Positions 28,923 through 64,000 of a stretch of 64,000 bases of DNA are shown piece after piece. The stretch is taken from the IMG/VR virus record IMGVR_UViG_3300032334_002567, positions 1 to 64,000 of that record; one strand, written 5' to 3'. Each line of letters starts with the position of its first letter. Position 1 is the stretch's first letter. The notes under the pieces are model-generated. The model made no database searches. It had not been told where the DNA came from and saw only the letters and a program-made list of their open reading frames with translations. A program made the position numbers and the translations under genes.

Positions 28923-30686
28923 ATGACACCAATAGAATTATCTCCTACAGATACACCAACTCCAACACCAACGGATACTCCACCTACAGATACTCCTACT
29001 CCTACTCCTACTCCTACTCCAACACCAACGGATACTCCACCTACAGATACACCAACCCCAACACCAATTCCACCTACAGATACTCCTACTCCAACACCAA
29101 TTCCACCTACAGATACACCAACTCCAACACCAATTCCACCTACAGATACTCCAACTCCAACACCAATTCCACCAACAGATACTCCTACTCCAACTCCAAC
29201 GCCAATTCCACCAACAGATACTCCTACTCCAACTCCAACACCAATTCCACCAACAGATACTCCTACTCCAACACCAATCCCACCAACAGATACTCCTACT
29301 CCAACACCTACCAATACACCTACCAATACACCCACCAATACACCTACCAATACACCTACCAATACACCCACCAATACACCTACCAATACACCCACCAATA
29401 CACCTACCAATACACCTACCAATACACCTACCCCTACTCCAACTCCTGCTCCTCAATTAATTAAATCAGGAGAAATTGTTCTTCTACTTTCTGGTTCGGG
29501 TGTTACCAGTCCAGGTCAGTCTTTGGGTGGAGAACCTTCTAATACTTTTGTGTCTCAGAGACTTTTTTCAGATATATCTGCTGATCAGGCACAAGAAGGC
29601 AAGACAGACTACAGATGCATATACGTTAGCAATGCAAGTAACGAAGGAACTCTTTATGGTGCAAAAGTTTATATACTTTACAAAGAAACAAGTGACGTAA
29701 CAGTAAATTTGGGATTCGTGGCTAGAAATGAAGTTCAACAGATAATAATATCAAAAGTAAAATCCATATGCAGTGGTACTTTTAAAATAATATACACAGA
29801 CACTTATTTAGGAAATATACGACAACAAGTTACATCAGAAATAGATCTATTCACAGAAGCCGGTGAAGCAAAAAGCATTGAAGAGATATCTTCTTCTATA
29901 AAAGAAAAACTCTCAGAACTAAATGGTTTAGAAACTGTTAATTCTATTGATTCAATATCAGTAGGTGGAAGCCAAGATGTAGGCGAAGAACAAAACGTTG
30001 TAAACGAAAATAGTCAAACAAATTCGGGAAGTTCAAGTATTTCAGAATTCACTCTCAGACATTCCCCTATAACTAGTAATTCTATATCAGGAACAATATA
30101 CTTAAATAGCAACCCAATACAAACATTCGTAATGCAGGAATCCGGAACAAGCGGTGAATGTGGAATAAACTATAATTTAATCTTTACAAGTATAGGTTCT
30201 CAAGCAATAAAAGCAACTAGTGGAACAATAAATCTAACAAGTGGAAATTTGACTTTAAATTGGAACAATAGTTCTCCTGGTGTTAACTACGTACGGACTA
30301 ATTACACCTATAAAAACACTACCTTTACTTTTAATATAACTTTTCAAGGACAAGTAGGAAATCGTTTTAATGATGAATTGGCTGTTAGTGATGTTAATCT
30401 TGATTCAATAGAAAGTCCTACAATTCAAACATATAGATTGTTTTCAGGAGGACCTGTTAATACAGAAGCAGATATCATAGACGTAGAAACAACTACGCCA
30501 AATGGTGTAGAATTTTGTAGAAATACAAGTTGCTCAAGTGAAGGGTACGATAACGCTTTTTATCTAGGAGATCTACATCCTTTAGATGTAGCTCCTATTT
30601 GGATAGAAAGAATAGCACCAGCAGATTCAAACGCTATTGAAAATGATGGATTTACTTTAAAAATTGACGGCACAACTTCGAGATAG
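28923..30686 (+). CDS. Virion structural protein with an N-terminal mucin-like Pro-Thr tract
   Basis: ~170-aa PT/PTDT/PTNT tract; SLGG...LFSD...DYRCIYVSN and PIWIER tail-protein-like segments. Confidence 0.7.
28944..29453 (+). repeat. Compound coding tandem repeats: [11 protein letters not shown] units, then 10 x 12-bp PTNT units (29307-29426)
   Basis: Directly visible. Confidence 0.95.
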
Positions 30687-47894: not shown

Positions 47895-49118
47895 CTATTC
47901 AAAATCCGACAAGTTGAAGAAATTGCATTCTTCTGAAATAAACTTTTTAGTCGAGAAATCAGTTAGAAACCAGTACCAATTCTTGGGTTTCTCTGGCTCA
48001 ACTGCTTCTCCATAGCCATCCGTTATGACGAAAACGCCGTCTGGGTACTTTTCACCATTTTGGATATGCTGCTGGATTGTTTGCTCCAATACAGCTAAAG
48101 AAGTGCCTCCACCACCATAAACAGAGACTTTCCCATTCTGCTTTGGACTAACTTCTGCCACCTTAGTATCGAAGCAAAATAGACGAACGTCAAATTTTTC
48201 GGAAGGCAATGAAGAAACTGCGGAGAAAAACCTATCTTTGTATCCCCAGCAAGACCCAGAGGTGTCAAGAAAGAAGTAAATTTTAATTTTAGATTTGCTC
48301 TTTTCAAGATGTTCAACTTCCATTTCTGACGGGATAAAGATTTCATCTAAGGCGGTAAGTCCTGATAAACGTCGATTAATTCTAGCCCATTGATCTATTT
48401 CTTTAAATTTACTTTGGTATTTGGCGTGGCACCATTTCTTGATTACAGTTTCCCATTTTCTTTTTTTTGTTTTAACTTCAAAATTTAAAACCTGCCAGAT
48501 TCCTTCCCCTAGCCCAATATGTTTTTGTATAGCATCAGAGAGACTCTTTTTTTCTTCTTTTGACATGCCTTCCAAAATATTGTTAGGAAGGTCGTTTTTA
48601 AAGGCGTGTTCGTCTACAGTGGATATTTCACCTTCACCTGGACCACCATCTCCGAATGACTTTTCAAACAAACTGTAGTAAAACTCATATGTTTCAGAAT
48701 TGGAAAGGTTAACTTTTTCTGCGAAAACGGTGTCCACCCAACAATAACTTTCCCAATTAAGTATGCTTTCTCTCTTAAAACCAAATTTTTCCACTAAAAG
48801 ATGGTTGACAACCACATCTAGGCATTGGTTACAGGCCAACATATTCACAGAGTCTTTAGTTCTTTTGCCGTGATTCAAAATCAAGTGCAAAGATTCATGG
48901 CAAATTACAAAGAGTTTATTGTAATAATCTAAAGAGTTCCAGAAATCCTCATTAAAAAGAAAGACAACAAACTCTCCTTCTTTGTCAAATTGAACGGCGG
49001 CCGTGTTGACTCTATTGGTAAAATGAGGTTTACCAATTTGCCATATTTTATAAAATATGGCATGGTGTTCTTCTAAACTCCTACTAATCTCTATCCACTC
49101 TTTATTTGTAATGCTCAT
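47895..49118 (-). CDS. Metallopeptidase (HExxH) plus VWA domain protein (DUF2201-like)
   Basis: TAAV, CHESLH, D..VN, VDEH; LDTSGS (MIDAS), FDT, GGGT, VITDG. Confidence 0.88.
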   Translation of the reverse strand: MSITNKEWIEISRSLEEHHAIFYKIWQIGKPHFTNRVNTAAVQFDKEGEFVVFLFNEDFWNSLDYYNKLFVICHESLHLILNHGKRTKDSVNMLACNQCLDVVVNHLLVEKFGFKRESILNWESYCWVDTVFAEKVNLSNSETYEFYYSLFEKSFGDGGPGEGEISTVDEHAFKNDLPNNILEGMSKEEKKSLSDAIQKHIGLGEGIWQVLNFEVKTKKRKWETVIKKWCHAKYQSKFKEIDQWARINRRLSGLTALDEIFIPSEMEVEHLEKSKSKIKIYFFLDTSGSCWGYKDRFFSAVSSLPSEKFDVRLFCFDTKVAEVSPKQNGKVSVYGGGGTSLAVLEQTIQQHIQNGEKYPDGVFVITDGYGEAVEPEKPKNWYWFLTDFSTKKFISEECNFFNLSDFE

Positions 49119-49128
49119 TTTAGTTGCT

Positions 49129-50820
49129 CTAGGCGTAGAAGTTCTCTATAGCATAATTAAAGTGCTCCTGAGTTCTCACTACCTTATGAATATTTCCAGA
49201 TAATCTTATTGCAGAAAAAAGAGTAGTGAAGATTCTTGAATTATCAACCAAAAAACTACTAAAGTCTTTTGGAGTAGGAACTAACTTGGCAACCCAATCG
49301 GCGTTAGACAGCCAACTTTTCTCTTTGCTGGAGAATTTTCTATTCTGTACGCCAGATACAATACAATGGTTAACTATCGAAATAAAGTTTGCCCAAGGGT
49401 CTCTAGGATCTAATAAACCCTGTGAAACTTCTGTGGGCGAAAGCTCCATATTACATAATATTTCCAAGCAATTCATTGCTTCTTCACCCGTCATTAATTT
49501 GGGAATAGATTTCACTATATTCTGAAACTCTCCCAACCGTAACTTTGAAAGATCGGCATTTTTTTGTATTTTTTCTAAAGTGGTTCCCCACATTACACTC
49601 ATAGCCTTCTTGTTATAAAAAGGCTGTGCTAGATTTATCAGGTCTCCTTCATTATCTTCAAACTTAATAGCCTGCAACTCTGTGAAATACTTTCTAATTT
49701 TCTTTACCACGCTACTGTTGGTGTTGGCCTTTAGTATCTCTTCACAAACTTCTTTAAATACAGAAACCTTGTCGATTTTTCCAATAATGTACGTAGAAGT
49801 CTTGCTGTTTTCAGAAATTAAAGAAGATATTTTTTCTTTTGGAACAAGTGGCAAAAAGTAATCTTTTAATGCGTCTGACTTAAGAACGTACTTCATGGCA
49901 GATGCATAGTTGTTCTCATTTGAAAGAAAAACTTTTGCTTGATCTGTATCTTTGGCAGACATCAAAGATTCAAGCTTTTCTAAAATAGGACCGCTACTTA
50001 GAGAAGAATAAAGCTTTGAAATATTACTAGATGAAGGGAGTATGTCTCTCATATCCCCCTTACAGCAATATGTATCCAGAGCATATTGCAGCCTTCTGGG
50101 TGATACCTTGCCTTTTTCTTCTGTTGAAAGGTCTTCCCACCATTGAATAGCCGAGTCGGCTGTTCTCTGTCCGTATCTAGTGCGAAACCAGTCAACACTA
50201 GGCGAGTAGGGAACTTCCACAGATACATGGAAACGATCTTTTTGTGCTGGGTCTAGCCTTTCAACGTCATAAGTTTGATCTTCATCATCTGGATTGATTG
50301 CAGCCCAGATCATTTTTAATTTAGGAAATTTGTATCCGTTAATGGATTTAAATTGCAGCAGCTCCATTACCGCATTTCTAACTTTTTTAGGGCTGCGGTT
50401 AAACTCATCAAAAAATAACGCCTCTATTTCCCCTGTGGCGAAAACAAGAGGACGGATCAAGTCCAAATATGCCAAGCCCTGTTCTCTGCCTATCGCATGA
50501 TCTACGATCTTTGATGCAGATGATTCTGACATTTTCCAATTAGAAACAACCCAATCAACAGCAAGTTGCCGGTCGATTGTTGAAAGCTCTTTCAAAATTA
50601 AGAATTGTTCTGGGACTTTATTCTCTATTTTCTCTTTTGGAACACCAACAAAGTCAACCCAAGGGTCCATTGTAGAGGCACTAAAATACCTGTAATTTAT
50701 TGAGCGACGTTCAAAAGCATCTTTTACCATGGCTGTTTTACCAACGCCATGCCTGCCGATGAACAAAACATTCTGGCTATTTTCAATCCAGAATTCAATT
50801 TTTTTGTCGATTTGATTCAT
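49129..50820 (-). CDS. MoxR-type AAA+ ATPase with long C-terminal extension
   Basis: GRHGVGKT, DFVGVP, FFDEFNR, AAINP, LDPAQKDRF, SPRR. Confidence 0.88.
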   Translation of the reverse strand: MNQIDKKIEFWIENSQNVLFIGRHGVGKTAMVKDAFERRSINYRYFSASTMDPWVDFVGVPKEKIENKVPEQFLILKELSTIDRQLAVDWVVSNWKMSESSASKIVDHAIGREQGLAYLDLIRPLVFATGEIEALFFDEFNRSPKKVRNAVMELLQFKSINGYKFPKLKMIWAAINPDDEDQTYDVERLDPAQKDRFHVSVEVPYSPSVDWFRTRYGQRTADSAIQWWEDLSTEEKGKVSPRRLQYALDTYCCKGDMRDILPSSSNISKLYSSLSSGPILEKLESLMSAKDTDQAKVFLSNENNYASAMKYVLKSDALKDYFLPLVPKEKISSLISENSKTSTYIIGKIDKVSVFKEVCEEILKANTNSSVVKKIRKYFTELQAIKFEDNEGDLINLAQPFYNKKAMSVMWGTTLEKIQKNADLSKLRLGEFQNIVKSIPKLMTGEEAMNCLEILCNMELSPTEVSQGLLDPRDPWANFISIVNHCIVSGVQNRKFSSKEKSWLSNADWVAKLVPTPKDFSSFLVDNSRIFTTLFSAIRLSGNIHKVVRTQEHFNYAIENFYA

Positions 50821-50823
50821 AAT

Positions 50824-50867
50824 AAAAAAGTAGCTCCGTTGAGAAGGCAAACCTCTCAACGGAGCTA
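50824..50867 (-). terminator. 14-bp perfect hairpin plus U-tract (terminator/attenuator)
   Basis: TAGCTCCGTTGAGA-9 nt-TCTCAACGGAGCTA-CTTTTTT. Confidence 0.8.
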
Positions 50868-50889
50868 AGTTGGAATTTAGCCTAAGAGG

Positions 50890-51918
50890 TCAAGCGTCTT
50901 TTCTATACCACCAAGAGTTCTTGGGTGCAAGCCATTCGCCATCTTCGTGACGCCATTCAAAAACATCGCTCTGAACTTCACGCAAAACCTTGATCTTGCG
51001 ATTGTTGACCAAGCTATTCATGGCAGAAAGGGCCAATCGGTACTTCTTTAAGTCTTCACATCTGGTGAGTCTGTCCAATGCCAGATACAAAGCCTTAGCT
51101 GGATCTCCCTCGTCTACGAATCGCACATTCTTAATGCGATCACAGAAATCAGAAAGCAAAGCCGGTCCATAGAAGATATACATTTTTCCTACAGCCGCCT
51201 GCACTTCTGCTTGGGCCTTGGGAATGTGAGTCATCACCCAATCGATCACTTCTGACCACTGGATTGCAAACTCTGTGATTTCTGATGGTGTGTAGGAGAG
51301 CTTGGCATCAAGTCCACGCATAATCGCCTTGCAGAAACCAGCGGTTTTATTGCCCCAACGACGATCAACGACCATCTGCATCTTCTCACCAACACTTCTT
51401 TTCGATCCTGAGTCGATGGCAAACTTGCTCTCTGGAAGCACTCCAAAAGTGAAGTAAAAACAAACCTCTTGCTTTTTGCTTGCCAAGAAGGCGTTGATTC
51501 GATGTTGGCCATCACCAGCTTGTCCGTTGGTATCAATCGCAATGCTTTCATGAGTAGGAAGCCAGCGATCAGACTCAATGTCTCTTTGCAAAGCTTCAAC
51601 GTGCATTCTTTTAACACGCCGATTACCCTCGCTAATCGACCAAATTGCTCCAAGCAATTCTTCTGCCATTGGTCGAGTCAACATAATGAATTCACTGTAT
51701 TGGGTGCTCTTCTTCACGCATGTGAACCAAGGCTTTCCGCTACGGTGAGCTTCGCTGAGATAGTGGTTTCGGTTTTCAATCGCTTCTGCTTCGATGAGCT
51801 TGATTTGCTCTTCGCTGCTGCTTGAGACGATTGATTCTTTTGGAGTGACACCAGGAATGCTGGGCTTCAACTTCGAACCAGCAATGATTAAATCAGCGAC
51901 CGAGCCTACCTTACCCAT
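50890..51918 (-). CDS. ParB/Srx-like (DGQHR) domain protein
   Basis: TRPMAEELL...NRR...DIESDRW...IAID..G...DGQHRINA...IDSG..RS; AAGGAG SD. Confidence 0.8.
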   Translation of the reverse strand: MGKVGSVADLIIAGSKLKPSIPGVTPKESIVSSSSEEQIKLIEAEAIENRNHYLSEAHRSGKPWFTCVKKSTQYSEFIMLTRPMAEELLGAIWSISEGNRRVKRMHVEALQRDIESDRWLPTHESIAIDTNGQAGDGQHRINAFLASKKQEVCFYFTFGVLPESKFAIDSGSKRSVGEKMQMVVDRRWGNKTAGFCKAIMRGLDAKLSYTPSEITEFAIQWSEVIDWVMTHIPKAQAEVQAAVGKMYIFYGPALLSDFCDRIKNVRFVDEGDPAKALYLALDRLTRCEDLKKYRLALSAMNSLVNNRKIKVLREVQSDVFEWRHEDGEWLAPKNSWWYRKDA

Positions 51919-52090: not shown

Positions 52091-52759
52091 ATGATTTGGC
52101 ACTCCCCCAAAATTTTAATTTGTTTGCCTACATTTCACTCAGAAATAGCATGGCTTGAACGATCTACAGAATCAGTTTCAAAGCAAACTTACGCAAACTT
52201 TGATTGCTATCTAGTCAAAGATTCTTGTACCAAGGCAGGCACTCCATGCCTTGAGTGCGACAACTGCAGGGCGACTGTGTCTTTTTGCCAGAAGCTTGCA
52301 CAAAAGGATAAAAGATTCAAGTTTTTTAATTTGCCTCTTAATTGTGCAGGTGCAGGTTGGGGGCCGAGAAATTTTGCTATACAAAATACTAAGCATGATT
52401 TAATAGCCTACCTAGATGATGATAATTGGTATGAGCCAAATCATCTAGAACTGTTGCTAGAAGCTTTAAAATCTAAAGATTCAGATATGGCATACACAGG
52501 CACTAGGTTAATTAAAAAAGATGGAACAATAGAAGGCATAAGAATTCATCCGTATGAGCCAAAGCAAGGGTACATAGATACATCTGAAATACTACACAAG
52601 AGGTTTTTAATAGAAAAATATGGAGGGTGGAGATGGGTAAAAAAAGGAAATGATTGGGATATAGTCTCTAGGTGGGTTCCGGGGTTAAAATGGAGCCACA
52701 CAAATCAAATCACCTTAAATTTTTACCTTCGTGAAGGATGTGGAATACACAGAACTTAA
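52091..52759 (+). CDS. Glycosyltransferase family 2
   Basis: LPTF, SVSKQTY, PRNFAI, IAYLDDDN, IDTS, NDW; AAGGAGG SD; CTAAATA upstream. Confidence 0.88.
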   Translation: MIWHSPKILICLPTFHSEIAWLERSTESVSKQTYANFDCYLVKDSCTKAGTPCLECDNCRATVSFCQKLAQKDKRFKFFNLPLNCAGAGWGPRNFAIQNTKHDLIAYLDDDNWYEPNHLELLLEALKSKDSDMAYTGTRLIKKDGTIEGIRIHPYEPKQGYIDTSEILHKRFLIEKYGGWRWVKKGNDWDIVSRWVPGLKWSHTNQITLNFYLREGCGIHRT

Positions 52760-53166
52760 AAGAACTTCCAGAATTTTGATTTTTCTTTTGGTTTTTGCTC
52801 TGGCTCTTCTTTTATTTTTTGAGCTAACATTTTTTGCTTTTCTTTTTTTCTTGCATTGTGTATGGCTCTTTTCACAAGTAGTTTGGCTGCGATTGGAATA
52901 AAAGGTAGATTCCTTTTATCCGACTCTTCTTTGAGCCAATCAACCACTCTATCAATGTTTTGTTCTGTCCATTCGCTTCCATTTTGATCCATTATTGCAG
53001 CTCTTTCGTTACATTTACAACTTGGAGTAGGAACTATGCCTACTTTTGCTAAAAGAGCTTTTAGTTCAGTGCCGGGACCTTCAGGGTTTTCTAGATAATT
53101 TTGTAGATTTTCTATGTATCTGGTTCTTAGATTTTGTACGTCTTCTATGTTGAAAGATTTACGCAT
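52756..53166 (-). CDS. Conserved-looking phage protein with a CxC motif
   Basis: GPGTELKALL..VGI...CKCNERA..MD..G..W...N...VDWLKEE...R.LPF. Confidence 0.65.
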   Translation of the reverse strand: MRKSFNIEDVQNLRTRYIENLQNYLENPEGPGTELKALLAKVGIVPTPSCKCNERAAIMDQNGSEWTEQNIDRVVDWLKEESDKRNLPFIPIAAKLLVKRAIHNARKKEKQKMLAQKIKEEPEQKPKEKSKFWKFF

Positions 53167-53739
53167 TTAATTTGCCTCTTTACGTAATCTAAAATTATTT
53201 CTACTAATCATAGCACGAGTTTGATGTGCAAAAGAAACTATATCTGCCCTGTGTTCGGTGATTGTTTCTTTAGCAGGCAAACCAGAATCTAATTTATCCA
53301 AGCAAACTACTAAAGGTATTCTAGCAACCGGACCAAAGTGAAAACATCCATCTTTTAGTATCGCTCCACATTGCTTTGCTGCTTCCCAAGCATCTTCTTT
53401 GCTAACATTTGGAAACTCAACAAAGCTATTCTCTAAATTTTCTATTGTTATTCTTTCTGGTTCTTGACTTGGAGGCTCAAACAAAGAGTCAAGCGGAGTA
53501 GTATAGGTGCAACAATCCTCAGCATTAATATCACAACAATCAAAACACTCTGTGTAGCATCGTCTATCACAAAAACAGCCGTCGTCTTGTGGTGATCCAG
53601 TTGGAACACAAAGAGGTCCTGGACCACCGAGGGCACAAGTCCAGTTAGGATTTTGATCGTCTGGTGGGTAACAGCAACCTTCTGCTTTTGCCAACATTAC
53701 AAATAAAATATCGTCTTCTTCTTGTTTTTCTTGGCTCAT
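53167..53739 (-). CDS. Cys-rich protein with somatomedin-B-like spacing in the N-terminal half
   Basis: GCC...C...C...CFCDRRC...CFDCC....DCC. Confidence 0.6.
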   Translation of the reverse strand: MSQEKQEEDDILFVMLAKAEGCCYPPDDQNPNWTCALGGPGPLCVPTGSPQDDGCFCDRRCYTECFDCCDINAEDCCTYTTPLDSLFEPPSQEPERITIENLENSFVEFPNVSKEDAWEAAKQCGAILKDGCFHFGPVARIPLVVCLDKLDSGLPAKETITEHRADIVSFAHQTRAMISRNNFRLRKEAN

Positions 53740-54950
53740 TCTTCCACCTTAAAAGTAAAATCAATGTCTAAAAACTTATCACTTATTCTTTTTTTGTCTT
53801 CTTCGCTTATTTCTTTGCTAGAAATGATTAAAATACTTTCTACTTGACATCTAACTTGTTTTATACCTATTATATTTAAACTTAGTAATTCTTGTTTAAT
53901 TTTATTTATAGATTCACCTTTAATTGTAAAAGGTCTACTATCTAAAAATTCAAATTGACGATAAAGCCTTCCGCAATCACAACGAGAATATTCTTGCTCT
54001 ATTTTACAATAATCTCCATTCCAATATCTTATAAAAGGACTTGGTAACGAAAAATAATCAGTGCTAAGTAATTTTTTGTCTTTTTCTTCGCACCAACTTA
54101 AATTATCTAATAGATGTTGTCTTCTTTCTTTACAAGTGATAAATGTAGATCCGCCATCCCAGCAACGCATATGGTCACAAAATTTATCTATAAAACCAGA
54201 TTCCAATAAAAAGCTTACATCTTTTTTGAGTATTTTTTCATTTGTATTGCTTAAAAGTGTACAAATTTTACCCTTAAAATTAAACTTTTTAATATAGTGA
54301 CACAAAGAGTTTATAGTAGAACCGGGACCTAACAAAACATCTATTTTATTTTCAGATAAAAATTTCAGCAAATCACGATAAAAAACATCTGGTTGATATT
54401 TGAGTAATTCTAAACTAGCACAATGCGATGTGGATTGATACTTTTCGCCATGCTTCTCCATAAAATTAGGGGGGTTTTTAAAAGTCTCCACGGCATTGTT
54501 AGACACTACCCTATTCTTAAAAAGATAAAGAACATGTGGATTAAAAATATTAAATTCGTCTAAAATCAAATCATAATGATTTTCACATTCTATGAATTTT
54601 AAGAATGGATCCCACCTAAGATACTCAAATCCAACGCCGGTTGTGCTTCCACTACTACGCATTATTTGAGATTCAGATGATAACTCACTAACATACCAAT
54701 CCTTTTTATTCAACAAATCGTCTTTTGAAAAATAAAATTGATTTTTATCTCTATAAACCTTGCTGTTTTTAAAAGCCCAAAGCTCAATATTTTTCTTTAA
54801 AACATTAACAACATCTAAAAGAACTTCTTGATCTTCATAAAGCAAGCCAGAACAAAAACTTTTGTAATCGTACAATACTTGTTTATTAGGTAAGTTATTT
54901 TTCCATTTAACTAGAAATTCTTTAGTTTTTTTATAACCTAGTTTTAGCAT
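53736..54950 (-). CDS. PaaK/CapK-like adenylate-forming (ANL) ligase
   Basis: RSSGSTTG P-loop, CWDGG, LLSTD, PFIRYWNGD, CDCGR. Confidence 0.8.
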   Translation of the reverse strand: MLKLGYKKTKEFLVKWKNNLPNKQVLYDYKSFCSGLLYEDQEVLLDVVNVLKKNIELWAFKNSKVYRDKNQFYFSKDDLLNKKDWYVSELSSESQIMRSSGSTTGVGFEYLRWDPFLKFIECENHYDLILDEFNIFNPHVLYLFKNRVVSNNAVETFKNPPNFMEKHGEKYQSTSHCASLELLKYQPDVFYRDLLKFLSENKIDVLLGPGSTINSLCHYIKKFNFKGKICTLLSNTNEKILKKDVSFLLESGFIDKFCDHMRCWDGGSTFITCKERRQHLLDNLSWCEEKDKKLLSTDYFSLPSPFIRYWNGDYCKIEQEYSRCDCGRLYRQFEFLDSRPFTIKGESINKIKQELLSLNIIGIKQVRCQVESILIISSKEISEEDKKRISDKFLDIDFTFKVEE

Positions 54951-54952
54951 AG

Positions 54953-55513
54953 CTATAACATAAAATCTGGTGTTTTTGGAGTAATGTATTTTAGGAACTC
55001 CACAGTTCCATTATTTGTAAAAACTACCTCATATCGACCTCTACATTGATGAGTGCTGCATTCGCAGTCCAAAGATCTAAAGTACTCTGCAATTGTTTCG
55101 CTTCCAGTTTTCCCAAATTTTTGTGTTCTAAGATAACATTTTCTTTTGCTTCTTCTGCCTGAGTCTAAAAACCAAACCATCCAAGACTCATCTGTCAAAA
55201 CCTCTAAAGTTTCCCGAGCTATTATCTTCGATGAGTCTTTATAAAAAATGTTATGTATGTCATTAAAGATAGGATATGCTACACTATAAACTCTATAAGT
55301 ATTTTTATCTTTTTTTATAGTATTCTTATCTATCTTAAAAAAATTACTTAACATATCAACTTTATAAGACAGCCAGTCTTTATTTTTATCTCGCATGGCC
55401 AAGTAGCAGTTCTTACCTTTGGATGGTCTTATAATAGAAGAACCTCCCAAGATAGTACCATAAAGCACTTGCTTTTGTTTTTCTGTAAATTTTGGACCAA
55501 TTTGGTAAGTCAT
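54953..55513 (-). CDS. Free-standing double-motif LAGLIDADG protein with catalytic acidic residues altered
   Basis: VLYGTILGGS and WMVWFLDSG in place of GxLLGDG and WFMDDG. Confidence 0.75.
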   Translation of the reverse strand: MTYQIGPKFTEKQKQVLYGTILGGSSIIRPSKGKNCYLAMRDKNKDWLSYKVDMLSNFFKIDKNTIKKDKNTYRVYSVAYPIFNDIHNIFYKDSSKIIARETLEVLTDESWMVWFLDSGRRSKRKCYLRTQKFGKTGSETIAEYFRSLDCECSTHQCRGRYEVVFTNNGTVEFLKYITPKTPDFML

Positions 55514-56633: not shown

Positions 56634-56930
56634 ATGGAAAAAGAAGAAAAAGAAGAGATTATAAAGTTTGAGAATAGAAAGACTTTTGAAGTCAAAATGA
56701 GACCTGCCAATGGAGGGGGAATAGAAAAAGCAATTTTTATAGATGGTGAACTACTAGATTGGCAAGTAGATATAAACTCTTTGGTAGATGCTATGAAAAT
56801 GGGGCCACAGTACATGAGAGAAATTCAAAGGGACATAGAAAAGCACTTTGTAGAATCTGTGTCTGATACTGTTGGAAGAAAAGTCACAGCAGAAGATATT
56901 AAACAAGCAATTAAAGTTGGATATATCTGA
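56634..56930 (+). CDS. Hypothetical protein
   Basis: 98 aa; GGAGG SD. Confidence 0.65.
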   Translation: MEKEEKEEIIKFENRKTFEVKMRPANGGGIEKAIFIDGELLDWQVDINSLVDAMKMGPQYMREIQRDIEKHFVESVSDTVGRKVTAEDIKQAIKVGYI

Positions 56931-56931
56931 T

Positions 56932-58206
56932 ATGAGTATGGTACATGATATACTGTGTAAACACACTATAGGCGATGGAGAAAAAATCGTCATAGACCCA
57001 GTTAAAAGCAATGGTGTGTATCTTGTAGACTTAATTGATGGAAAAAAATACCTAGACTGTTCAAGTCAATATGCCAGCATGGCTCTTGGTTGGAATAATC
57101 CAACATTAAAAAAATACCTAGAAGAAAACAAAGAAAGTCTAAATTTCTGTAATTTGCATAAAATTGCAAACTGTGATTTTTACACAACAGTGTATGCAGA
57201 ATTTGTAAGCAAGTTTTCTGAAATTACAAGTGATTTCAAACATTTGTTTTTTGTAGAAGGTGGAACTTTAGGTGTAGAAAACGCAATAAAAGCAGCCTTT
57301 GATTGGAAAGCTAAGAAACTCGGGCTGACTCATAAAGCTTCTAATTCTATAGTTAACAAGTTCGATGTTATACATTTACAGCAGGCGTTTCATGGAAGAA
57401 GCGGATATTGTTTGTCTATAACTAACACAATAGCAAACAAAGTTTCATTGTTCCCAAAGTTTAATTGGACAAGAATAAAAAATCCAAAGTTAGAATTTCC
57501 TATCGTTGAAAGCAAAGTCGCAATAGATGAAGAGCTAAGCTTGTTGCAGGCCGAAAATGCTCTGAAATCGAATAATGTGGCTGCAATAGTTCTGGAAACC
57601 ATTCAAGGTGAAGGAGGTGATAATCACTTTAGAACAGAATATTTCAAAGCTTTGCGTAAACTTGCAGATCAATATGAGGCATTACTTATATTGGACGAGG
57701 TTCAAACTGGTGTTGGACTTACGGGTAAAATGTGGGCTTACCAACATTCTGGGATAATCCCAGATATAATAGCTTTTGGAAAAAAGACACAAGTTTGCGG
57801 CTTTGCTTCCACCGATAGGATTGATGAAGTTTCTGATAATGTTTTTCGTGAATCAAGTAGAATAAGTTCTACTTGGGGCGGTAATATAATTGATATGTAC
57901 AGATTTACTCAAATAATAGAAATATTACAAGAACAAAGATTGGTTGATAATGCCAAAGAAGTGGGCGAATATTTTTTAAATAAACTTTATGAAGTAAAAA
58001 ATATAAAGAATGTTAGGGGCAAAGGATTAATGATTGCCTTTGATCTAAATACAACCCAAGAAAGAAATGAAGTTCTAAAAAAGCTTCAGTCAGATATGGC
58101 TATATTGCCTTGTGGAGAAAAGTCAATTCGTTTAAGGCCACATCTCATCTTCTCTAAAGATAATGTAGATGAAGCCATATATTATATAAATAAATCTGTT
58201 TCTTAA
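56932..58206 (+). CDS. lat: L-lysine 6-aminotransferase (class III PLP)
   Basis: FFVEGG.LGVENAIKAAFDWK, AFHGRSGY, IQGEGGDNHFR, DEVQTG, AFGKKTQV, SSRISSTWGGN. Confidence 0.9.
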   Translation: MSMVHDILCKHTIGDGEKIVIDPVKSNGVYLVDLIDGKKYLDCSSQYASMALGWNNPTLKKYLEENKESLNFCNLHKIANCDFYTTVYAEFVSKFSEITSDFKHLFFVEGGTLGVENAIKAAFDWKAKKLGLTHKASNSIVNKFDVIHLQQAFHGRSGYCLSITNTIANKVSLFPKFNWTRIKNPKLEFPIVESKVAIDEELSLLQAENALKSNNVAAIVLETIQGEGGDNHFRTEYFKALRKLADQYEALLILDEVQTGVGLTGKMWAYQHSGIIPDIIAFGKKTQVCGFASTDRIDEVSDNVFRESSRISSTWGGNIIDMYRFTQIIEILQEQRLVDNAKEVGEYFLNKLYEVKNIKNVRGKGLMIAFDLNTTQERNEVLKKLQSDMAILPCGEKSIRLRPHLIFSKDNVDEAIYYINKSVS

Positions 58207-59648: not shown

Positions 59649-60908
59649 ATGACAATGCTCCAAGAAGCTAAAAAACAACTAGAAGCAGCGTATGGGTTTG
59701 CACAAATAGACAAAGAAAGCTGGGAGCGTCTTCAATATCCACAAAAAACACTACAAGTCTCTATCCCAATACGTCACGATGATGGCACCTTAAAGGTTTA
59801 CCAGGCGTACAGATGCCAGTATGACAGCACACTTGGGCCATATAAAGGAGGGATAAGATATCATCCAAATGTAGATCGTGATCACTGTGAGGCTCTTGCT
59901 TTTTGGATGACTTTTAAATGTGGTTGTTTAAAACTTCCTTACGGAGGTGCAAAAGGTGGTATAAGTGTAGATGCAACAAAATTATCGCACAGAGAGCTAG
60001 AAAGAATCAGCAAGGCATATATTGCTTCAATAATGGACTTTATAGGCCCCGATTCAGATATACCTGCTCCTGATCTTTACACAGATGAAAGAATAATGGG
60101 ATGGATGTATTCTGAGTACAAAAGAATCAAAGGAGGCCATCCAAAAGACATTATAACCGGCAAGCCAGTGGCGTTAGGAGGAATAGAAGGAAGAAGCTCC
60201 GCTACAGGTCACGGTGGTTATTATGTTTTAGAAAATATTTTGAAAAGCAATGTGAAAGATATTTCAACTAATCCAGAAGATATTAAAATAGCAATACAAG
60301 GTTTCGGCAAAGTAGGTTACTGGCTTGCAGAGAAGTGCTTTAGATCAGGTATGAGAGTAGTGGCAGTTACGAACGAATTTGGTGGAGTTTATAACAAGAA
60401 TGGATTAAATATAATTTCTTGTAAAAAATGTATAGAAAATAGCTCTGGACAAGAGTGGGGTGAAGGAGAAAAAATTACAAATGAAGAAATTTGGGATTTA
60501 GATGTAGACGTAATTGCTCCTTCTGCGGTGGAAAATGTGATTACTAAAGATATAGCATCTAAGATTAAAGCTAAAATAGTTTTAGAAATGGCTAATGGAC
60601 CAACTACAAATGAAGGGGATGCAATTTTAAATGATCGTGATATTTTAGTTGTCCCAGATATATTGGCAAATGGCGGAGGAGTAGTTGTTAGCTATTTTGA
60701 ATGGCTCCAGAACAGAAATGCTATTACAAGGTCCTTAGAAAAAGTGGAAGCAGACCTAAAAGAAATGATGGTCTATGCAACAGAAAGAGTTTTAGGGTTA
60801 CACACAAAACACAATATACCAGCAAGAACTGCTGCTTATGTTTTAGCACTCAAAAGAATAAACGATTCAAATGTTTGTTTAGGAATAAAAGACTACTTTC
60901 AAAAATAA
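59649..60908 (+). CDS. gdhA: Glutamate dehydrogenase (Glu/Leu/Phe/Val family)
   Basis: GPYKGGIRYHP, MTFK, GGAKGG, DIPAPD, TGKP..LGG..GR..ATG, QGFGKVG, EMANGP, PDILANGGGV.VSYFEW. Confidence 0.93.
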   Translation: MTMLQEAKKQLEAAYGFAQIDKESWERLQYPQKTLQVSIPIRHDDGTLKVYQAYRCQYDSTLGPYKGGIRYHPNVDRDHCEALAFWMTFKCGCLKLPYGGAKGGISVDATKLSHRELERISKAYIASIMDFIGPDSDIPAPDLYTDERIMGWMYSEYKRIKGGHPKDIITGKPVALGGIEGRSSATGHGGYYVLENILKSNVKDISTNPEDIKIAIQGFGKVGYWLAEKCFRSGMRVVAVTNEFGGVYNKNGLNIISCKKCIENSSGQEWGEGEKITNEEIWDLDVDVIAPSAVENVITKDIASKIKAKIVLEMANGPTTNEGDAILNDRDILVVPDILANGGGVVVSYFEWLQNRNAITRSLEKVEADLKEMMVYATERVLGLHTKHNIPARTAAYVLALKRINDSNVCLGIKDYFQK

Positions 60909-61667: not shown

Positions 61668-62264
61668 ATGAAATACGTGTCAATTGATATCGAAACAACT
61701 GGGTTGGATTTTCAAAAGTGTGATATCATTCAATTTGCAGCTGTTATAGATGATTTATCCGAAAGAGAGCCTATAAAGGAACTGCCTAAGCTAAATGTAT
61801 ATTTTACGAAGGATCATTATGTTGGAGAGCCCATAGCTCTTTCCATGCACTCAGATATATTCAAGAAAATAGCCCTTGCTCGTAAAAACAAAGTTGAATA
61901 TGACGAAGTAAGCGAGTCGCATTTTGCCAACATAGAAGATTTGCCTTCTATATTTAGAAATTTTCTGACCAAAAATGGAATAGAAGAAAACATAAGAACG
62001 GGTGCAATCGTTATCAATGTCGCCGGTAAAAATATTGGCGGGTTTGACATACCATTTTTAAAAGAAAAAATTAAAGACTGGGAACAAGTTTATTTCAGAC
62101 AAAGAGTTTTAGATCCATCTATTTTGTATATGAACATAGAAACGGATAAAGAAATTCCAGATAGTAAAACCTGCATGGAAAGAGCAGGAATAAAAGGTGC
62201 TGTGTCTCACACTGCACTTGAAGATGCAATGGTTATTGTAGAGTTAATTAGATATAAGTTTTAA
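61668..62264 (+). CDS. DEDDh 3'-5' exonuclease (DnaQ-like)
   Basis: SIDIETTG, GKNIGGFD, LDP, HTALEDA. Confidence 0.9.
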   Translation: MKYVSIDIETTGLDFQKCDIIQFAAVIDDLSEREPIKELPKLNVYFTKDHYVGEPIALSMHSDIFKKIALARKNKVEYDEVSESHFANIEDLPSIFRNFLTKNGIEENIRTGAIVINVAGKNIGGFDIPFLKEKIKDWEQVYFRQRVLDPSILYMNIETDKEIPDSKTCMERAGIKGAVSHTALEDAMVIVELIRYKF

Positions 62265-64000
62265 AAGGCTTTTGTATCACTAGTTCTTTTGCAAGTTTTG
62301 AACAGTTCTCTTTTTCATCTTTATATTTATTATAAAGATCATTATATTCTGGATATTTTTCTAGTTCTTCTTCTAACTCTAAAGCATCTTTGTCTTTAGT
62401 GTTTTCGTTTTTTTTACACCAACTTCTGGCCCCGTAGTGTCTTCTTGTATTAGGGTCGAACATTTCCACAACGTAATCTGAATTTAAAATTTTTGGTAAA
62501 ATAAAAGCACCCACATCTAAACTCAAAAGTCTAAATTCATTATTTGGGTCATAAACATCTTTATACAAAGAGTTTTGTTCATGTTCTAAAAGTCTTTTTC
62601 CTCGCCAATACTCTAGAAAAGCAGATGAACTAGTAAAATTGTCTATCTTGAACCTTTTTTCTATGTCTACATGATATCCAACCCAATTTGCTTTAATTCT
62701 TTTCATTAATGGTAGGCTACATAAGAGAAAATCTGTGCTTGTTACATGCGGCATTCTAAGTTGATCTTCACTCTTGGGATATGCAAGTACACCTACAGCA
62801 CTCAGAGGAGCGGCTGTCTTCATTATTGCATTTTTATTGCTAAAAAAAGATTTAAGTTGACTTTCCCAATCACGACTTAGAACTATAACATCATCGTGCA
62901 TTAGAAGATAATACTCTGTGTGAACCCAAGAAATACATTGTTCTATAATCTGTGAATGACCTACACGACTCCAAGTTCTACTAATCGTGATTGGCATAGG
63001 TTTATCCCATGCCCCATTAATATCTACCCAATTTAGAGATCTAAGCTCTTCTAAAAACTTTTGTTTCTTATCCTGTAATTCTGGGGGATTATTTTTATCT
63101 CTATCATCTCCTCCATTAATGCCAACTATAAAATGTTCTAAAGTTTCTGGGGTGGTTCTGAGCAGTAAAGAAAAAATACATCTCATAAAAGTATTAATGT
63201 CACAATTATATGTTGGGATAATTGCTGTCATTTTGTTAGGTACTTTAGTTATTTTCTCACACTCATACTCAGTCAAAATTGTATACGGGTCAGATTCTAC
63301 ATCGAGTTTTTCTATAGATTTAAATTGATCCTCATAAACATCCCAGTATTGTTTCCATTCACCCAACAAATGACAATCCCACATCCAGTCTAAAAAAGAA
63401 GTCCAATGTACATAATTAAGACTATCTATTTTTGAATGGGTTAATTGAACATCATGTCCCATTTTTCTGACTTGTTCTAAAATATGATTGTCCCCATGTT
63501 CAAATATTTCCCGAGCGGTTAGACGAAAAGGATTCGTCGCAGACCAAGCTGGTCGTGTGCCTATTTGAAGCTCACCTTCTTTTGGAAAAGTTAATTTTCT
63601 TGCTACTTCACTTGTAATTCCATACGCCACAGTTCTTATGTGACCACCTTCTCTGTGCGGGGTTTTTGGTTCATAACATTGAGCAACAAGGCCAACTTTT
63701 GGATTAAAAAACTTTTCAATAAAAGGGACCAAAAAGTTTTTTCTCATAGGGAGCATATCATCTGAAAACCAAAACATTTTTTTCCACTTTAATAAGTGCA
63801 ACATTTCCCCACATGCATAAATTAAAGCTTTAAGATCCATCAAAGATGAATTTTCAAACTGAATGTAGAAGTCGGGATTATACTTTAGTATGTTTTCTTT
63901 TTCTTCTTCTAAAGAATTATGATTCGAATCAATAGAGTGAAAAACAAAAAGTTTACAATTGCATTTATTTGCATTGTTCCAAGCCCTAAGCCATTTATCG
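62248..64000 (-). CDS. Multi-domain GT2-like glycosyltransferase; 5' end beyond the window
   Basis: WFSDD and AIIPTYN...LLMHDD modules; frame stays open from 63843 to the window edge. Confidence 0.75.
   Translation of the reverse strand, partial: DKWLRAWNNANKCNCKLFVFHSIDSNHNSLEEEKENILKYNPDFYIQFENSSLMDLKALIYACGEMLHLLKWKKMFWFSDDMLPMRKNFLVPFIEKFFNPKVGLVAQCYEPKTPHREGGHIRTVAYGITSEVARKLTFPKEGELQIGTRPAWSATNPFRLTAREIFEHGDNHILEQVRKMGHDVQLTHSKIDSLNYVHWTSFLDWMWDCHLLGEWKQYWDVYEDQFKSIEKLDVESDPYTILTEYECEKITKVPNKMTAIIPTYNCDINTFMRCIFSLLLRTTPETLEHFIVGINGGDDRDKNNPPELQDKKQKFLEELRSLNWVDINGAWDKPMPITISRTWSRVGHSQIIEQCISWVHTEYYLLMHDDVIVLSRDWESQLKSFFSNKNAIMKTAAPLSAVGVLAYPKSEDQLRMPHVTSTDFLLCSLPLMKRIKANWVGYHVDIEKRFKIDNFTSSSAFLEYWRGKRLLEHEQNSLYKDVYDPNNEFRLLSLDVGAFILPKILNSDYVVEMFDPNTRRHYGARSWCKKNENTKDKDALELEEELEKYPEYNDLYNKYKDEKENCSKLAKELVIQKPFKTYI

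What the first reader, a model, noticed from the sequence alone, without database searches (positions are those of the whole stretch)
52091..54950. PaaK-like ligase, Cys-rich protein, CxC protein and GT2: a possible virion-decoration module
Seen: three tightly coupled minus-strand genes (4-nt overlap; abutting) converge on a late GT2. The middle protein has 12 Cys within about 56 residues in SMB-like spacing. Known: CapK/PaaK-like ligases occur in polysaccharide loci. Inference: acylation or glycosylation of a disulfide- or metal-rich appendage, or a RiPP-like modified product. I know of no described phage pathway with this composition.
Basis: partly seen in the sequence, partly recalled or inferred. 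Interest (0 to 1): 0.6.

Follow-up and report, generated by a model that had tools for sequence, protein, structure and literature searches.

The report
Phage enzyme pair with tagged swappable cargo
A 381-kb freshwater jumbo phage carries a conserved cassette of a sugar-adding enzyme, an ATP-dependent ligase and a cysteine-rich protein with a short N-terminal tag; in related phages everything after the tag is swapped, which points to an undescribed way of modifying or mounting exchangeable binding proteins.

Summary
The 404-aa protein has no Pfam hit, but its AlphaFold model is a PaaK/CapK-type adenylate-forming enzyme (Foldseek E 1e-13). The 222-aa protein is a GT2. The 190-aa protein has 12 Cys in 56 residues.

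Linkage is conserved. In 11 distinct relatives the order is GT2, ligase, variable protein, tightly coupled. Thirteen of 14 GT2 orthologues in IMG/VR sit beside the ligase. The window has the ligase-cargo-p136 segment inverted.

The main new result is an N-terminal tag. All downstream "cargo" proteins (56 to 2,654 aa, up to 19% Cys, or Pro/Thr-rich) share 8-14 residues ending in an invariant Lys and nothing else. They carry Stig1, PKD, DUF285 or laminin-G domains. In one pair of relatives, DNA homology (91%) stops exactly after the tag.

A second tag type goes with a second ligase clade, and both occur in this genome. Other clades pair the ligase with other glycosyltransferases, including a GT9 fusion beside ADP-heptose synthesis.

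Best reading (about 0.45): a tag-linked glycosylation/acylation cassette for swappable, adhesin-like proteins. Display on the virion is unproven. The CxC protein is a widespread accessory of glycosyltransferase islands, not specific to this cassette. No cultured phage or cellular genome carries the ligase.

The parts
52091..52759 (+). GT2 (GT-A fold) glycosyltransferase, 222 aa. It has an invariant DDD motif (res 109-111, nt 52415-52423) and a four-Cys insertion (res 46-59, nt 52226-52267).
   Evidence: Pfam PF00535 E 4.6e-17. Weak NCBIfam matches to TuaG, PglI and WcaA, well below cut-off. Nearest solved relative is GalT1, 5hea. Orthologues of 47-65% identity sit directly upstream of the ligase in 13 of 14 IMG/VR loci. 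Invariant columns.
52756..53166 (-). 136-aa helical protein with a conserved PxCxC motif (CKC at res 50-52, nt 53011-53019). An accessory of glycosyltransferase islands; function unknown.
   Evidence: No family match. 923 homologues. AF2 model is all-alpha, pLDDT 79.6, with no significant structural match. Homologues sit beside GT25/GT2/WavE genes and Mtd_N fibre genes, and downstream of the cargo in L011.
53167..53739 (-). 190-aa 'cargo' protein: acidic N-terminus, tag, Cys-rich region, and a C-terminal ~100-aa region of unknown fold.
   Evidence: No family match. Only 2 homologues (88% and 79% identity) among 5.8 billion clusters. Tag and all Cys conserved. Atlas model is poor, pLDDT 0.40.
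53686..53709 (-). N-terminal tag, residues 11-18 (ILFVMLAK). Pattern: two hydrophobic residues, F or S, x, L or M, 1-2 residues, then an invariant K.
   Evidence: Shared by every protein encoded directly downstream of clade-1 ligases. A tag HMM scores 8-25 against a best score of 6.1 in the reversed database. DNA homology between L010 and L020 ends just after the tag.
53509..53676 (-). Cys-rich region, residues 22-77: 12 Cys, with spacing CC-11-C-8-C-10-C-1-C-3-C-3-C-2-CC-6-CC.
   Evidence: All 12 are conserved in P0121 and P0122.
53736..54950 (-). PaaK/CapK-fold adenylate-forming ligase, 404 aa. P-loop SSGSTTG (res 99-105, nt 54636-54656); variant A5-like motif (res 258-267, nt 54150-54179); YWNGD (res 309-313, nt 54012-54026); CxCGR (res 324-328, nt 53967-53981).
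   Evidence: AF2 pLDDT 87.5. Foldseek hits to BT_0428 (4r1m), PaaK1, ClxA, AjiA1 and NatL2 at E 1e-13 to 1e-11, TM 0.5-0.6. Atlas structural neighbours are CapK_C clusters, TM 0.72. More than 321 homologues. Conserved columns. Profile alignment to ClxA.
54953..55513 (-). Free-standing LAGLIDADG homing endonuclease. It flanks the cassette and marks one end of the inverted segment. Probably not a functional part of the cassette.
   Evidence: Pfam PF03161 E 1.5e-25. 65% identical copy in L011, on the far side of the segment that is inverted in the window.

Best explanation
This is a phage cassette that makes a post-translationally modified, swappable binding protein. The cargo gene encodes a short N-terminal tag ending in an invariant lysine, followed by a fast-evolving Cys-rich (disulfide- or metal-bonded) body.

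Two enzymes travel with the tag. One is a GT2 glycosyltransferase, which would transfer sugar from a nucleotide-sugar. The other is a CapK/PaaK-type ligase, which would use ATP to turn a carboxylate into an acyl-adenylate and pass it to an amine, hydroxyl or thiol.

I infer that the tag is the handle through which the cargo is recognised, by the enzymes and/or by its docking site. I also infer that the enzymes decorate the cargo, or a glycan on it, with sugar plus an acyl or amide-linked group. The finished protein would act outside the cell, on the virion surface or released at lysis, as an adhesin-like module.

Shown here: the folds and families of both enzymes; the conserved, reciprocal gene linkage; the tag; cargo swapping at the tag boundary; and the adhesin-type domains in relatives' cargos.

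Inferred: that the cargo is the enzymes' substrate; the role of the lysine; the chemistry; and the location of the product.
For: Enzyme identity:
- Ligase fold.
- P-loop and the YWNGD and CxCGR motifs are conserved and align to the PaaK-family enzyme ClxA.
- GT2.

Linkage:
- The order GT2, ligase, cargo, with overlapping or abutting genes, occurs in 11 distinct relatives.
- 24 contigs carry the window's own arrangement.
- In the reverse test, 13 of 14 GT2 orthologues in IMG/VR lie next to the ligase.

The ligase is tied to glycosylation across clades:
- It lies beside unrelated GT2 genes in L022, L034 and L038.
- It is fused to GT9 and followed by HldE in L015.
- HldE-like and GlmS-like genes are nearby in L001 and L032.

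The tag:
- 22 seed sites plus 7 new ones, all at residues 4-20 of ORFs next to ligases. Scores are 8-25 against 6.1 in the reversed control.
- All 15 IMG/VR stretches (20 matches) to a back-translated tag pattern are true N-termini.
- Among five paralogous tags in this genome there are 39 synonymous against 11 non-synonymous codon differences, so selection acts on the peptide.
- The two tag types map to two separate, well-supported groups of the ligase tree.

Cargo swapping:
- L010 and L020 are 91% identical through GT2, ligase and the first 22 cargo codons, then unrelated.
- Cargo length runs from 56 to 2,654 aa.
- Cargo domains: Stig1 repeats (8, 13 and 33 copies), DUF285 plus PKD, laminin-G x5, and Pro/Thr mucin-like linkers.
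Against: - There is no direct evidence that either enzyme touches the cargo. The complex prediction could not be run.
- In this same genome the second ligase lies 145 kb from its presumed tagged genes, so cis-linkage is not obligatory.
- Five IMG/VR fragments carry tagged genes but no ligase. They are only 29-65% complete, so this is inconclusive.
- Several distant ligase clades show no tag within 10 kb.
- One relative (L002) has a downstream laminin-G protein without a recognisable tag.
- The tag has no invariant Ser, Thr or Cys that would suit a glycosyltransferase, so the GT2 target must lie elsewhere.
- Cys-rich proteins made in a reducing cytoplasm are unusual for virion parts.
- No expression, proteome or cultured-phage data exist.
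Confidence: 0.45

Rival explanations
1. The tag is an assembly or targeting handle. It could dock onto a virion site or work like the T4 capsid-targeting sequence for packaged proteins, and the enzymes would not read it. GT2 and the ligase build or tailor a glycan on the virion or the cargo body independently of the tag, or merely share the cargo's expression timing.
For: - A conserved N-terminus with a swapped C-terminus is the usual design of phage fibres and of T4 internal proteins (my own knowledge).
- The homology break sits right after the tag.
- Tagged genes can lie far from the ligase.
- Cargos carry fibre or adhesin domains.
- Homologues of the CxC protein lie beside Mtd_N fibre genes.
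Against: - The tag is only 8-14 residues long and stays with the upstream enzyme genes at recombination junctions.
- The two tag types follow the two ligase clades.
- The tag end lacks a consistent L/I-x-E protease site of the T4 kind; only a few of the 22 tags have one.
- Tagged 56-aa peptides are odd as structural parts.
Confidence: 0.25
2. This is a RiPP-like or toxin-like system. The tag is a leader, the Cys-rich part is a core that is matured (glycosylated on Cys, Ser or Thr as in glycocins, or acylated) and released at lysis. The released product would act as an antimicrobial, signalling or host-manipulating peptide. The giant versions would be secondary expansions.
For: - Many tagged ORFs are 56-140 aa with 8-14% Cys. 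One is a 16-residue tag followed by a 40-residue core with 8 Cys.
- Several tagged genes can follow a single ligase (L022, L028).
- GT2-family enzymes glycosylate Cys-rich, leader-bearing peptides in glycocin systems (my own knowledge).
Against: - The tag starts within 4-20 residues of the N-terminus, which is shorter than typical leaders.
- No RRE-type domain, leader peptidase or exporter was seen near the cassette.
- Clade-1 cargos are 180-2,654 aa with repeat and lectin domains.
- The window's cargo has a ~100-aa non-Cys C-terminal region.
Confidence: 0.15
3. GT2 and the ligase act on something other than the cargo. Candidates are host envelope polysaccharide (serotype conversion or exclusion) or glycan-hypermodified phage DNA. 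On this view the Cys-rich gene is a functionally separate neighbour.
For: - CapK-like ligases and GT2s are typical of polysaccharide loci. The best structural match, BT_0428, is a CapK/PaaK-family protein solved as a putative acyl-CoA ligase.
- Phage glycosyltransferases are known to modify DNA and host serotype (PMC12619734).
- Sugar-nucleotide genes are nearby in relatives.
- The genome is rich in other glycosyltransferases.
Against: - A tagged ORF immediately follows the ligase, with coupled or overlapping genes, across relatives whose ligases are 34-55% identical to the window's.
- The ligase-cargo-p136 segment inverted as one block.
- The homology break lies after the tag, not at the gene boundary.
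Confidence: 0.12

Closest known systems
CapK/PaaK family of adenylate-forming enzymes (ANL superfamily; BT_0428 PDB 4r1m, PaaK1 2y27; Pfam CapK_C PF27533)
   Same: Same two-domain fold over the full length (Foldseek E 1e-13, TM ~0.6; Atlas TM 0.72). Shares the P-loop SSGSTTG and the RY-x-x-GD-like and CxCG motifs. Like these enzymes, it is associated with glycan genes.
   Different: No Pfam, NCBIfam or PDB sequence-level match. The A5 'YGxTE' position reads HMRCWDGG. It has many extra invariant Cys, His and Trp residues. It is found only on large uncultured phage contigs. It is always followed by a tagged variable protein.
CoA-independent PaaK-like amide/ester ligases NatL2, AjiA1 and ClxA (benzoxazole pathways)
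   Same: Among the top structural matches. ClxA is the only PDB sequence that a family profile aligns to, at E 0.29. These enzymes show that this fold can pass the acyl-adenylate directly to an amine or hydroxyl without CoA.
   Different: They act on small aromatic acids in natural-product clusters. There is no evidence here for such substrates, and identity is only 12-16%.
Phage virion glycosylation (mycobacteriophage capsid and tail-tube C-terminal glycans; Freeman et al. 2023, as cited in PMC12619734)
   Same: Phage-encoded GT2-type enzymes that modify phage proteins.
   Different: That system has no ligase, no N-terminal tag and no swappable Cys-rich cargo, and its targets are the major structural subunits. 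Here the target and its location are unproven.
Glycocin systems (SunA/SunS, ThuS) and serine-rich-repeat adhesin glycosylation (GalT1, PDB 5hea)
   Same: GT2-family enzymes acting on leader-bearing Cys-rich peptides or on adhesins. GalT1 is the nearest solved sequence relative of the window's GT2, at E 6.7e-5.
   Different: The similarity is limited to the generic GT-A core. The window's GT2 is only 222 aa, with no extra peptide-binding domain. The cargos are mostly far larger than glycocins.
T4-type internal proteins with a capsid-targeting sequence (my own knowledge)
   Same: A roughly 10-residue conserved N-terminal tag on otherwise hypervariable proteins.
   Different: The tags here lack a consistent L/I-x-E cleavage site and end in an invariant Lys. 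They are linked to two enzymes, and the cargos carry extracellular-type Cys-rich, lectin and PKD domains.
Stig1-type Cys-rich repeats (Pfam PF04885)
   Same: Relatives' cargos hold 8, 13 and 33 such repeats.
   Different: The window's 190-aa cargo matches no family. It shares only the tag and the high Cys content.

Membership tests
PaaK/CapK adenylate-forming enzymes (ANL superfamily) | Two-domain PaaK fold | tested here: met
   AF2 model pLDDT 87.5. Foldseek to 4r1m, 2y27, 9s45, 6wuq and 6six at E 1e-13 to 4e-12 with full-length alignments. Atlas TM 0.70-0.73 to CapK_C clusters.
PaaK/CapK adenylate-forming enzymes (ANL superfamily) | Phosphate-binding loop (S/T)SG(S/T)TG | tested here: met
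   SSGSTTG at residues 99-105. G101 is invariant, and S100, S102, T103 and G105 are at least 90% conserved in 25 homologues.
PaaK/CapK adenylate-forming enzymes (ANL superfamily) | Match to the curated sequence models (PF00501, PF27533, NCBIfam PaaK/CapK) | tested here: not met
   No Pfam hit at E <= 0.1. The only NCBIfam hit is the DVU_1553 AMP ligase C-terminus at 15.4 bits against a cut-off of 300. phmmer against PDB finds nothing.
PaaK/CapK adenylate-forming enzymes (ANL superfamily) | Core motifs A5 (YGxTE) and A8-like (RYxxGD) | tested here: inconclusive
   In the profile alignment to ClxA, YWNGD aligns with RYDLGD and CxCG with CSCG. The A5 position reads HMRCWDGG against YYGCTECG. The alignment E-value is only 0.29. 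The catalytic Lys of the C-terminal domain could not be assigned.
PaaK/CapK adenylate-forming enzymes (ANL superfamily) | ATP-dependent adenylation of a carboxylate; nature of the acceptor | not testable with these tools
   Needs an enzyme assay.
GT2 glycosyltransferases (GT-A) | Pfam PF00535 above the gathering score, and a DxD motif | tested here: met
   62.9 bits against 23.3. D109, D110 and D111 are invariant in 9 orthologues.
GT2 glycosyltransferases (GT-A) | Donor sugar and acceptor | not testable with these tools
   All NCBIfam equivalog matches are far below cut-off.
Somatomedin-B (SMB) domain | Match to the SMB model; 8-Cys knot | tested here: not met
   No Pfam family at E <= 1 for the 190-aa protein. 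The resemblance in Cys spacing is by eye only.
RiPP biosynthetic cluster | Conserved leader followed by a variable core on a small precursor | tested here: inconclusive
   A conserved N-terminal tag is present. Some precursors are 56-140 aa, but the window's is 190 aa and relatives reach 2,654 aa.
RiPP biosynthetic cluster | Known maturase, RRE domain, leader peptidase or exporter in the cluster | tested here: not met
   None was found by Pfam, PHROGs or NCBIfam among the neighbours.
T4-type capsid-targeting sequence cargo | N-terminal ~10-residue tag ending in an L/I-x-E prohead-protease site | tested here: not met
   Only a few of the 22 tags end in L-x-E. Most have L-x-D-K or L-x-G-K. The invariant residue is Lys.
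Virion decoration / fibre protein | Presence in particles; position in a structural gene block | not testable with these tools
   No cultured relative and no RNA or proteome data. The neighbours in the window are a MoxR/VWA pair, a ParB-like protein, a homing endonuclease and metabolic genes.

The most novel reading that the evidence does not exclude
The invariant lysine of the tag is the acceptor of the ligase. An ATP-activated carboxylate (an acyl group, a sugar acid, or another protein's carboxyl) would be joined to it. A short, portable peptide tag would then let the phage covalently equip or mount any cargo placed behind it, from a 40-residue knot to a 2,600-residue repeat protein. The glycosyltransferase would extend or complete the adduct. 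That would be a new tag-directed protein conjugation system, native to jumbo phages.
Probability: 0.2. Interest if true: 0.85.

Novelty: new variant of a known kind. Interest (0 to 1): 0.7.

Why it matters
Phage-encoded protein modification is barely charted, and the known case (mycobacteriophage virion glycans) involves neither a ligase nor a tag. Here an enzyme pair and an 8-14-residue tag stay constant while the protein behind the tag is exchanged wholesale. That is the signature of a system at the phage-host or phage-environment interface.

If the tag is what the enzymes or the particle recognise, three things follow. It gives a handle for finding the variable binding proteins of uncultured jumbo phages. 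It is a testable example of leader-like recognition on full-size proteins. It is also a possible short tag for enzymatic protein modification. The family occurs in hundreds of freshwater phage contigs and has no annotation at present.

Tried and rejected
No verdict.
- Sequence-level identification of the ligase by Pfam, PHROGs, NCBIfam and PDB phmmer: nothing usable.
- Cultured phages (INPHARED), by blastn and tblastn: no match.
- GTDB species genomes, pattern scan: no relative.
- Literature searches for this gene combination: no paper. A CapK search gave only unrelated Staphylococcus capsule papers.
- Homology between the 136-aa protein and the 134-aa CxC protein of clade-2 cassettes: BLASTP found nothing and hhalign aligned only 17 columns at 24% probability. 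Not established.
- Fold of the 136-aa protein: a generic helical bundle with no significant match (Foldseek best E 1.8; VIA best Z 5.8). The atlas fold library was unavailable.
- Atlas search for the 190-aa protein: model too poor, no lead.
- N-terminal 240 aa of the 642-aa ligase fusions, and the 425-aa upstream proteins of some clades: no family or PDB match.
- A link to the neighbouring lysine 6-transaminase-family gene and glutamate dehydrogenase: syntenic only in near relatives, so rejected as part of the cassette.
- Inverted repeats at the ends of the inverted segment: none convincing.
- Promoters, terminators and the T4 late motif: at chance level.
- RNA evidence: no RNA run holds the region. 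Read laying was not used, because DNA contigs would not bear on function.
- Ligase in five tag-bearing IMG/VR fragments: absent, but the records are 29-65% complete, so this is inconclusive.
It was redone from files.
Full report
**What the window is.** The window is the first 64 kb of a 381,443-bp virus record, about 79% complete by CheckV. It carries a T4-type large terminase, class II ribonucleotide reductase, SbcCD-like proteins, a primase and a RecD-like helicase. GC content is about 35%. DNA runs that hold the region are lake or freshwater metagenomes, and none is an RNA run.

**Observation.**
- The four genes are at the stated coordinates.
- The ligase gene (53736-54950, minus strand) overlaps the Cys-rich gene (53167-53739) by ATGA, behind a Shine-Dalgarno-like stretch.
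- The Cys-rich gene abuts the 136-aa gene (52756-53166).
- The 136-aa gene converges on the GT2 gene (52091-52759, plus strand), overlapping it by 4 nt.
- A LAGLIDADG endonuclease gene ends 2 nt before the ligase start.
- The 190-aa protein has 12 Cys in residues 22-77.
- 'Late' and 'SMB-like' could not be substantiated.

**The ligase.** Sequence families fail to identify it.
- It has more than 321 homologues of about 400 aa, at 42-56% identity among those listed. They lie on contigs of up to 487 kb.
- A model built on 25 homologues is confident, with pLDDT 87.5.
- The model matches PaaK-family structures over its whole length. Hits are BT_0428, PaaK1, ClxA, AjiA1 and NatL2, at E 1e-13 to 1e-11 and TM 0.5-0.6.
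- The ESM Atlas places it next to CapK_C clusters, TM 0.72.
- The P-loop, a YWNGD motif and a CxCGR motif are conserved. The usual YGxTE position is replaced by a family-specific HMRCWDGG.
- No cultured phage and no GTDB species genome carries it.
- The nearest viral structures are distant AMP-ligase-like proteins.

**Linkage.**
- In 11 distinct relatives a 217-233-aa orthologue of the window's GT2 (53-65% identity) ends at or overlaps the ligase start on the same strand. These are L001, L002, L007-L014 and L020.
- In each, a further ORF starts at the ligase stop.
- Searching from the GT2 side, 13 of 14 full-length orthologues in IMG/VR lie on ligase contigs next to the ligase. The most divergent one has no ligase within 4 kb.
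- L011 is syntenic with the window on both sides (p342, GT2, then LAGLIDADG, p179, p171). It has ligase, cargo and p136 co-directional with GT2.
- The window therefore carries an in-place inversion of exactly this three-gene block. So do 24 contigs with an 88%-identical cargo.
- No inverted repeats mark the ends of the inverted block.

**The ligase goes with glycosylation in general.** Other clades pair it with unrelated GT2 genes (L022, L034, L038). L015 fuses it to a GT9 domain and follows it with HldE, which makes ADP-heptose. HldE-like and GlmS-like genes occur nearby in L001 and L032. Homologues of a second glycosyltransferase of the window (62248-63843) lie within 10 kb of the ligase in five loci.

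**The cargo and its tag.** The proteins encoded after the ligase are unrelated to one another in sequence and range from 180 to 2,654 aa.
- Cys content is 8-19%, or the protein is Pro/Thr-rich.
- Domains found are Stig1 repeats (8, 13 and 33 copies), DUF285 plus PKD, five laminin-G modules and mucin-like linkers.
- All share one short N-terminal motif ending in an invariant Lys. In the window it is ILFVMLAK, at residues 11-18.
- A second motif type, GPIYSxLxGK, follows clade-2 ligases.
- An HMM built from 22 sites recovers 7 further tagged small Cys-rich ORFs next to ligases. Scores are 8-25, against 6.1 at best in the reversed database.
- A back-translated pattern for type 2 hit 15 IMG/VR stretches (20 matches), and every one is a true N-terminus. 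They include a 56-aa peptide made of a 16-residue tag and a 40-residue core with 8 Cys.
- The genome itself holds a second ligase at 120451-121692. It also holds five type-2 tagged genes at 266045-269563, preceded by two glycosyltransferase-like genes.
- Across those five tags, synonymous codon differences outnumber non-synonymous ones 39 to 11. The peptide is therefore what is conserved.
- On a ligase tree, the two tag types fall in two separate, well-supported groups. This shows co-inheritance, not proof of co-evolution.
- L010 and L020 are 91% identical through GT2, the ligase and the first 22 cargo codons. After that they share nothing. Cargo is exchanged exactly behind the tag.
- The window's own cargo has only two homologues in 5.8 billion clusters. 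Both keep the tag and every Cys.

**The CxC protein.** Its family is large, with 923 hits. The model is a helical bundle with no informative structural match. In other phages it lies at the edge of glycosyltransferase islands and next to Mtd_N fibre genes. A local PxCxC resemblance to the 134-aa protein of clade-2 cassettes does not establish homology. I treat it as a general accessory, not a specific partner.

**Interpretation.** Three facts fit a cassette that modifies and/or mounts exchangeable, adhesin-like proteins. The two enzymes and the tag stay constant, the cargo is swapped at the tag boundary, and the ligase associates with sugar chemistry across clades.
- The enzyme chemistry, namely acyl-adenylate formation and sugar transfer, follows from the families.
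- That the cargo is the substrate, and that the lysine matters, are inferences.
- The main rival is that the tag is only an assembly or targeting handle.
- A RiPP-like reading fits the small tagged peptides but not the giant ones.
- Action on host glycans or on DNA is possible. It leaves the tight, reciprocal linkage and the tag-boundary swap unexplained.

**What could not be done.**
- No RNA data exist for the region.

Noticed in passing
window 52756-54950 compared with L011 9962-14055: The three-gene block of ligase, cargo and p136 is inverted in place relative to the syntenic relative L011. The flanking genes (p342 and GT2 on one side, LAGLIDADG, p179 and p171 on the other) keep their order. 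No inverted repeats lie at the ends.
   Followed up: yes
window 54953-55513 (-): Free-standing LAGLIDADG homing endonuclease, 2 nt upstream of the ligase gene. L011 has a 65%-identical copy at the equivalent junction. It may be connected with the rearrangement.
   Followed up: partly
window 56872-58206 (+) and 59649-60908 (+): A protein of the L-lysine 6-transaminase family (TIGR03251, 503 bits, just under the 520.8 cut-off) lies near a glutamate dehydrogenase. This is an unusual metabolic pair for a phage. It is syntenic only in near relatives, so probably not part of the cassette.
   Followed up: partly
window 28923-30686 (+): 587-aa protein with a ~170-residue N-terminal Thr/Pro/Asp repeat (mucin-like linker) and then a globular part. 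It is a further candidate glycosylation target. The 172-aa 'Cys-rich' ORF on the opposite strand is a shadow of this repeat.
   Followed up: no
G000 120451-122437: Second ligase paralogue (413 aa, 46% identity). It is followed by a 137-aa protein with an NPNCxCRG motif and a 95-aa membrane-like protein with a CHEC motif. The same trio occurs in L028 and L032, and the 134-aa protein also in L022 and L033. Proteins of PrkA/DUF444/SpoVR size lie upstream, matching the trio annotated in L001.
   Followed up: partly
G000 266045-269563: Cluster of five genes whose products all start with the type-2 tag (GPIYSxLxGK) and then differ: 190, 312, 114, ~124 and 177 aa. It is preceded by GT2_4-like and GT34-like glycosyltransferase genes (261066-263175).
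   Followed up: yes
L056 3341, L057 5296, L058 3711, L067 1130: An identical 56-aa ORF (16-residue tag plus a 40-residue core with 8 Cys) occurs on four 50-90-kb phage contigs. It lies among small membrane-protein genes and glycosyltransferase-like genes. No ligase was found on these incomplete records.
   Followed up: partly
L015 9974-13647: A natural fusion of the ligase with a GT9 (heptosyltransferase-type) domain, followed by HldE (ADP-heptose synthesis). It suggests that heptose is one of the sugars used by this system.
   Followed up: partly
window 47895-51918 (-): A MoxR-like AAA ATPase (576 aa), a VWA/metallopeptidase-like protein (407 aa) and a 342-aa protein with a DGQHR ParB-like motif (phrog_5931) lie just upstream of the GT2. 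All three are syntenic in L011 and L047.
   Followed up: no
window 62248-63843 (-): 531-aa protein with a weak GT2 domain. Homologues lie within 10 kb of the ligase in L001, L007, L009, L014 and L015, so it may be a further member of the same glycosylation island.
   Followed up: partly
L004 8001-17929: A 642-aa ligase with an unassigned 240-aa N-terminal extension. A DUF8361 protein precedes it, and three consecutive large Cys-rich proteins follow (1,154, 568 and more than 925 aa; 5-11% Cys). Their N-termini do not match the tag HMM.
   Followed up: partly
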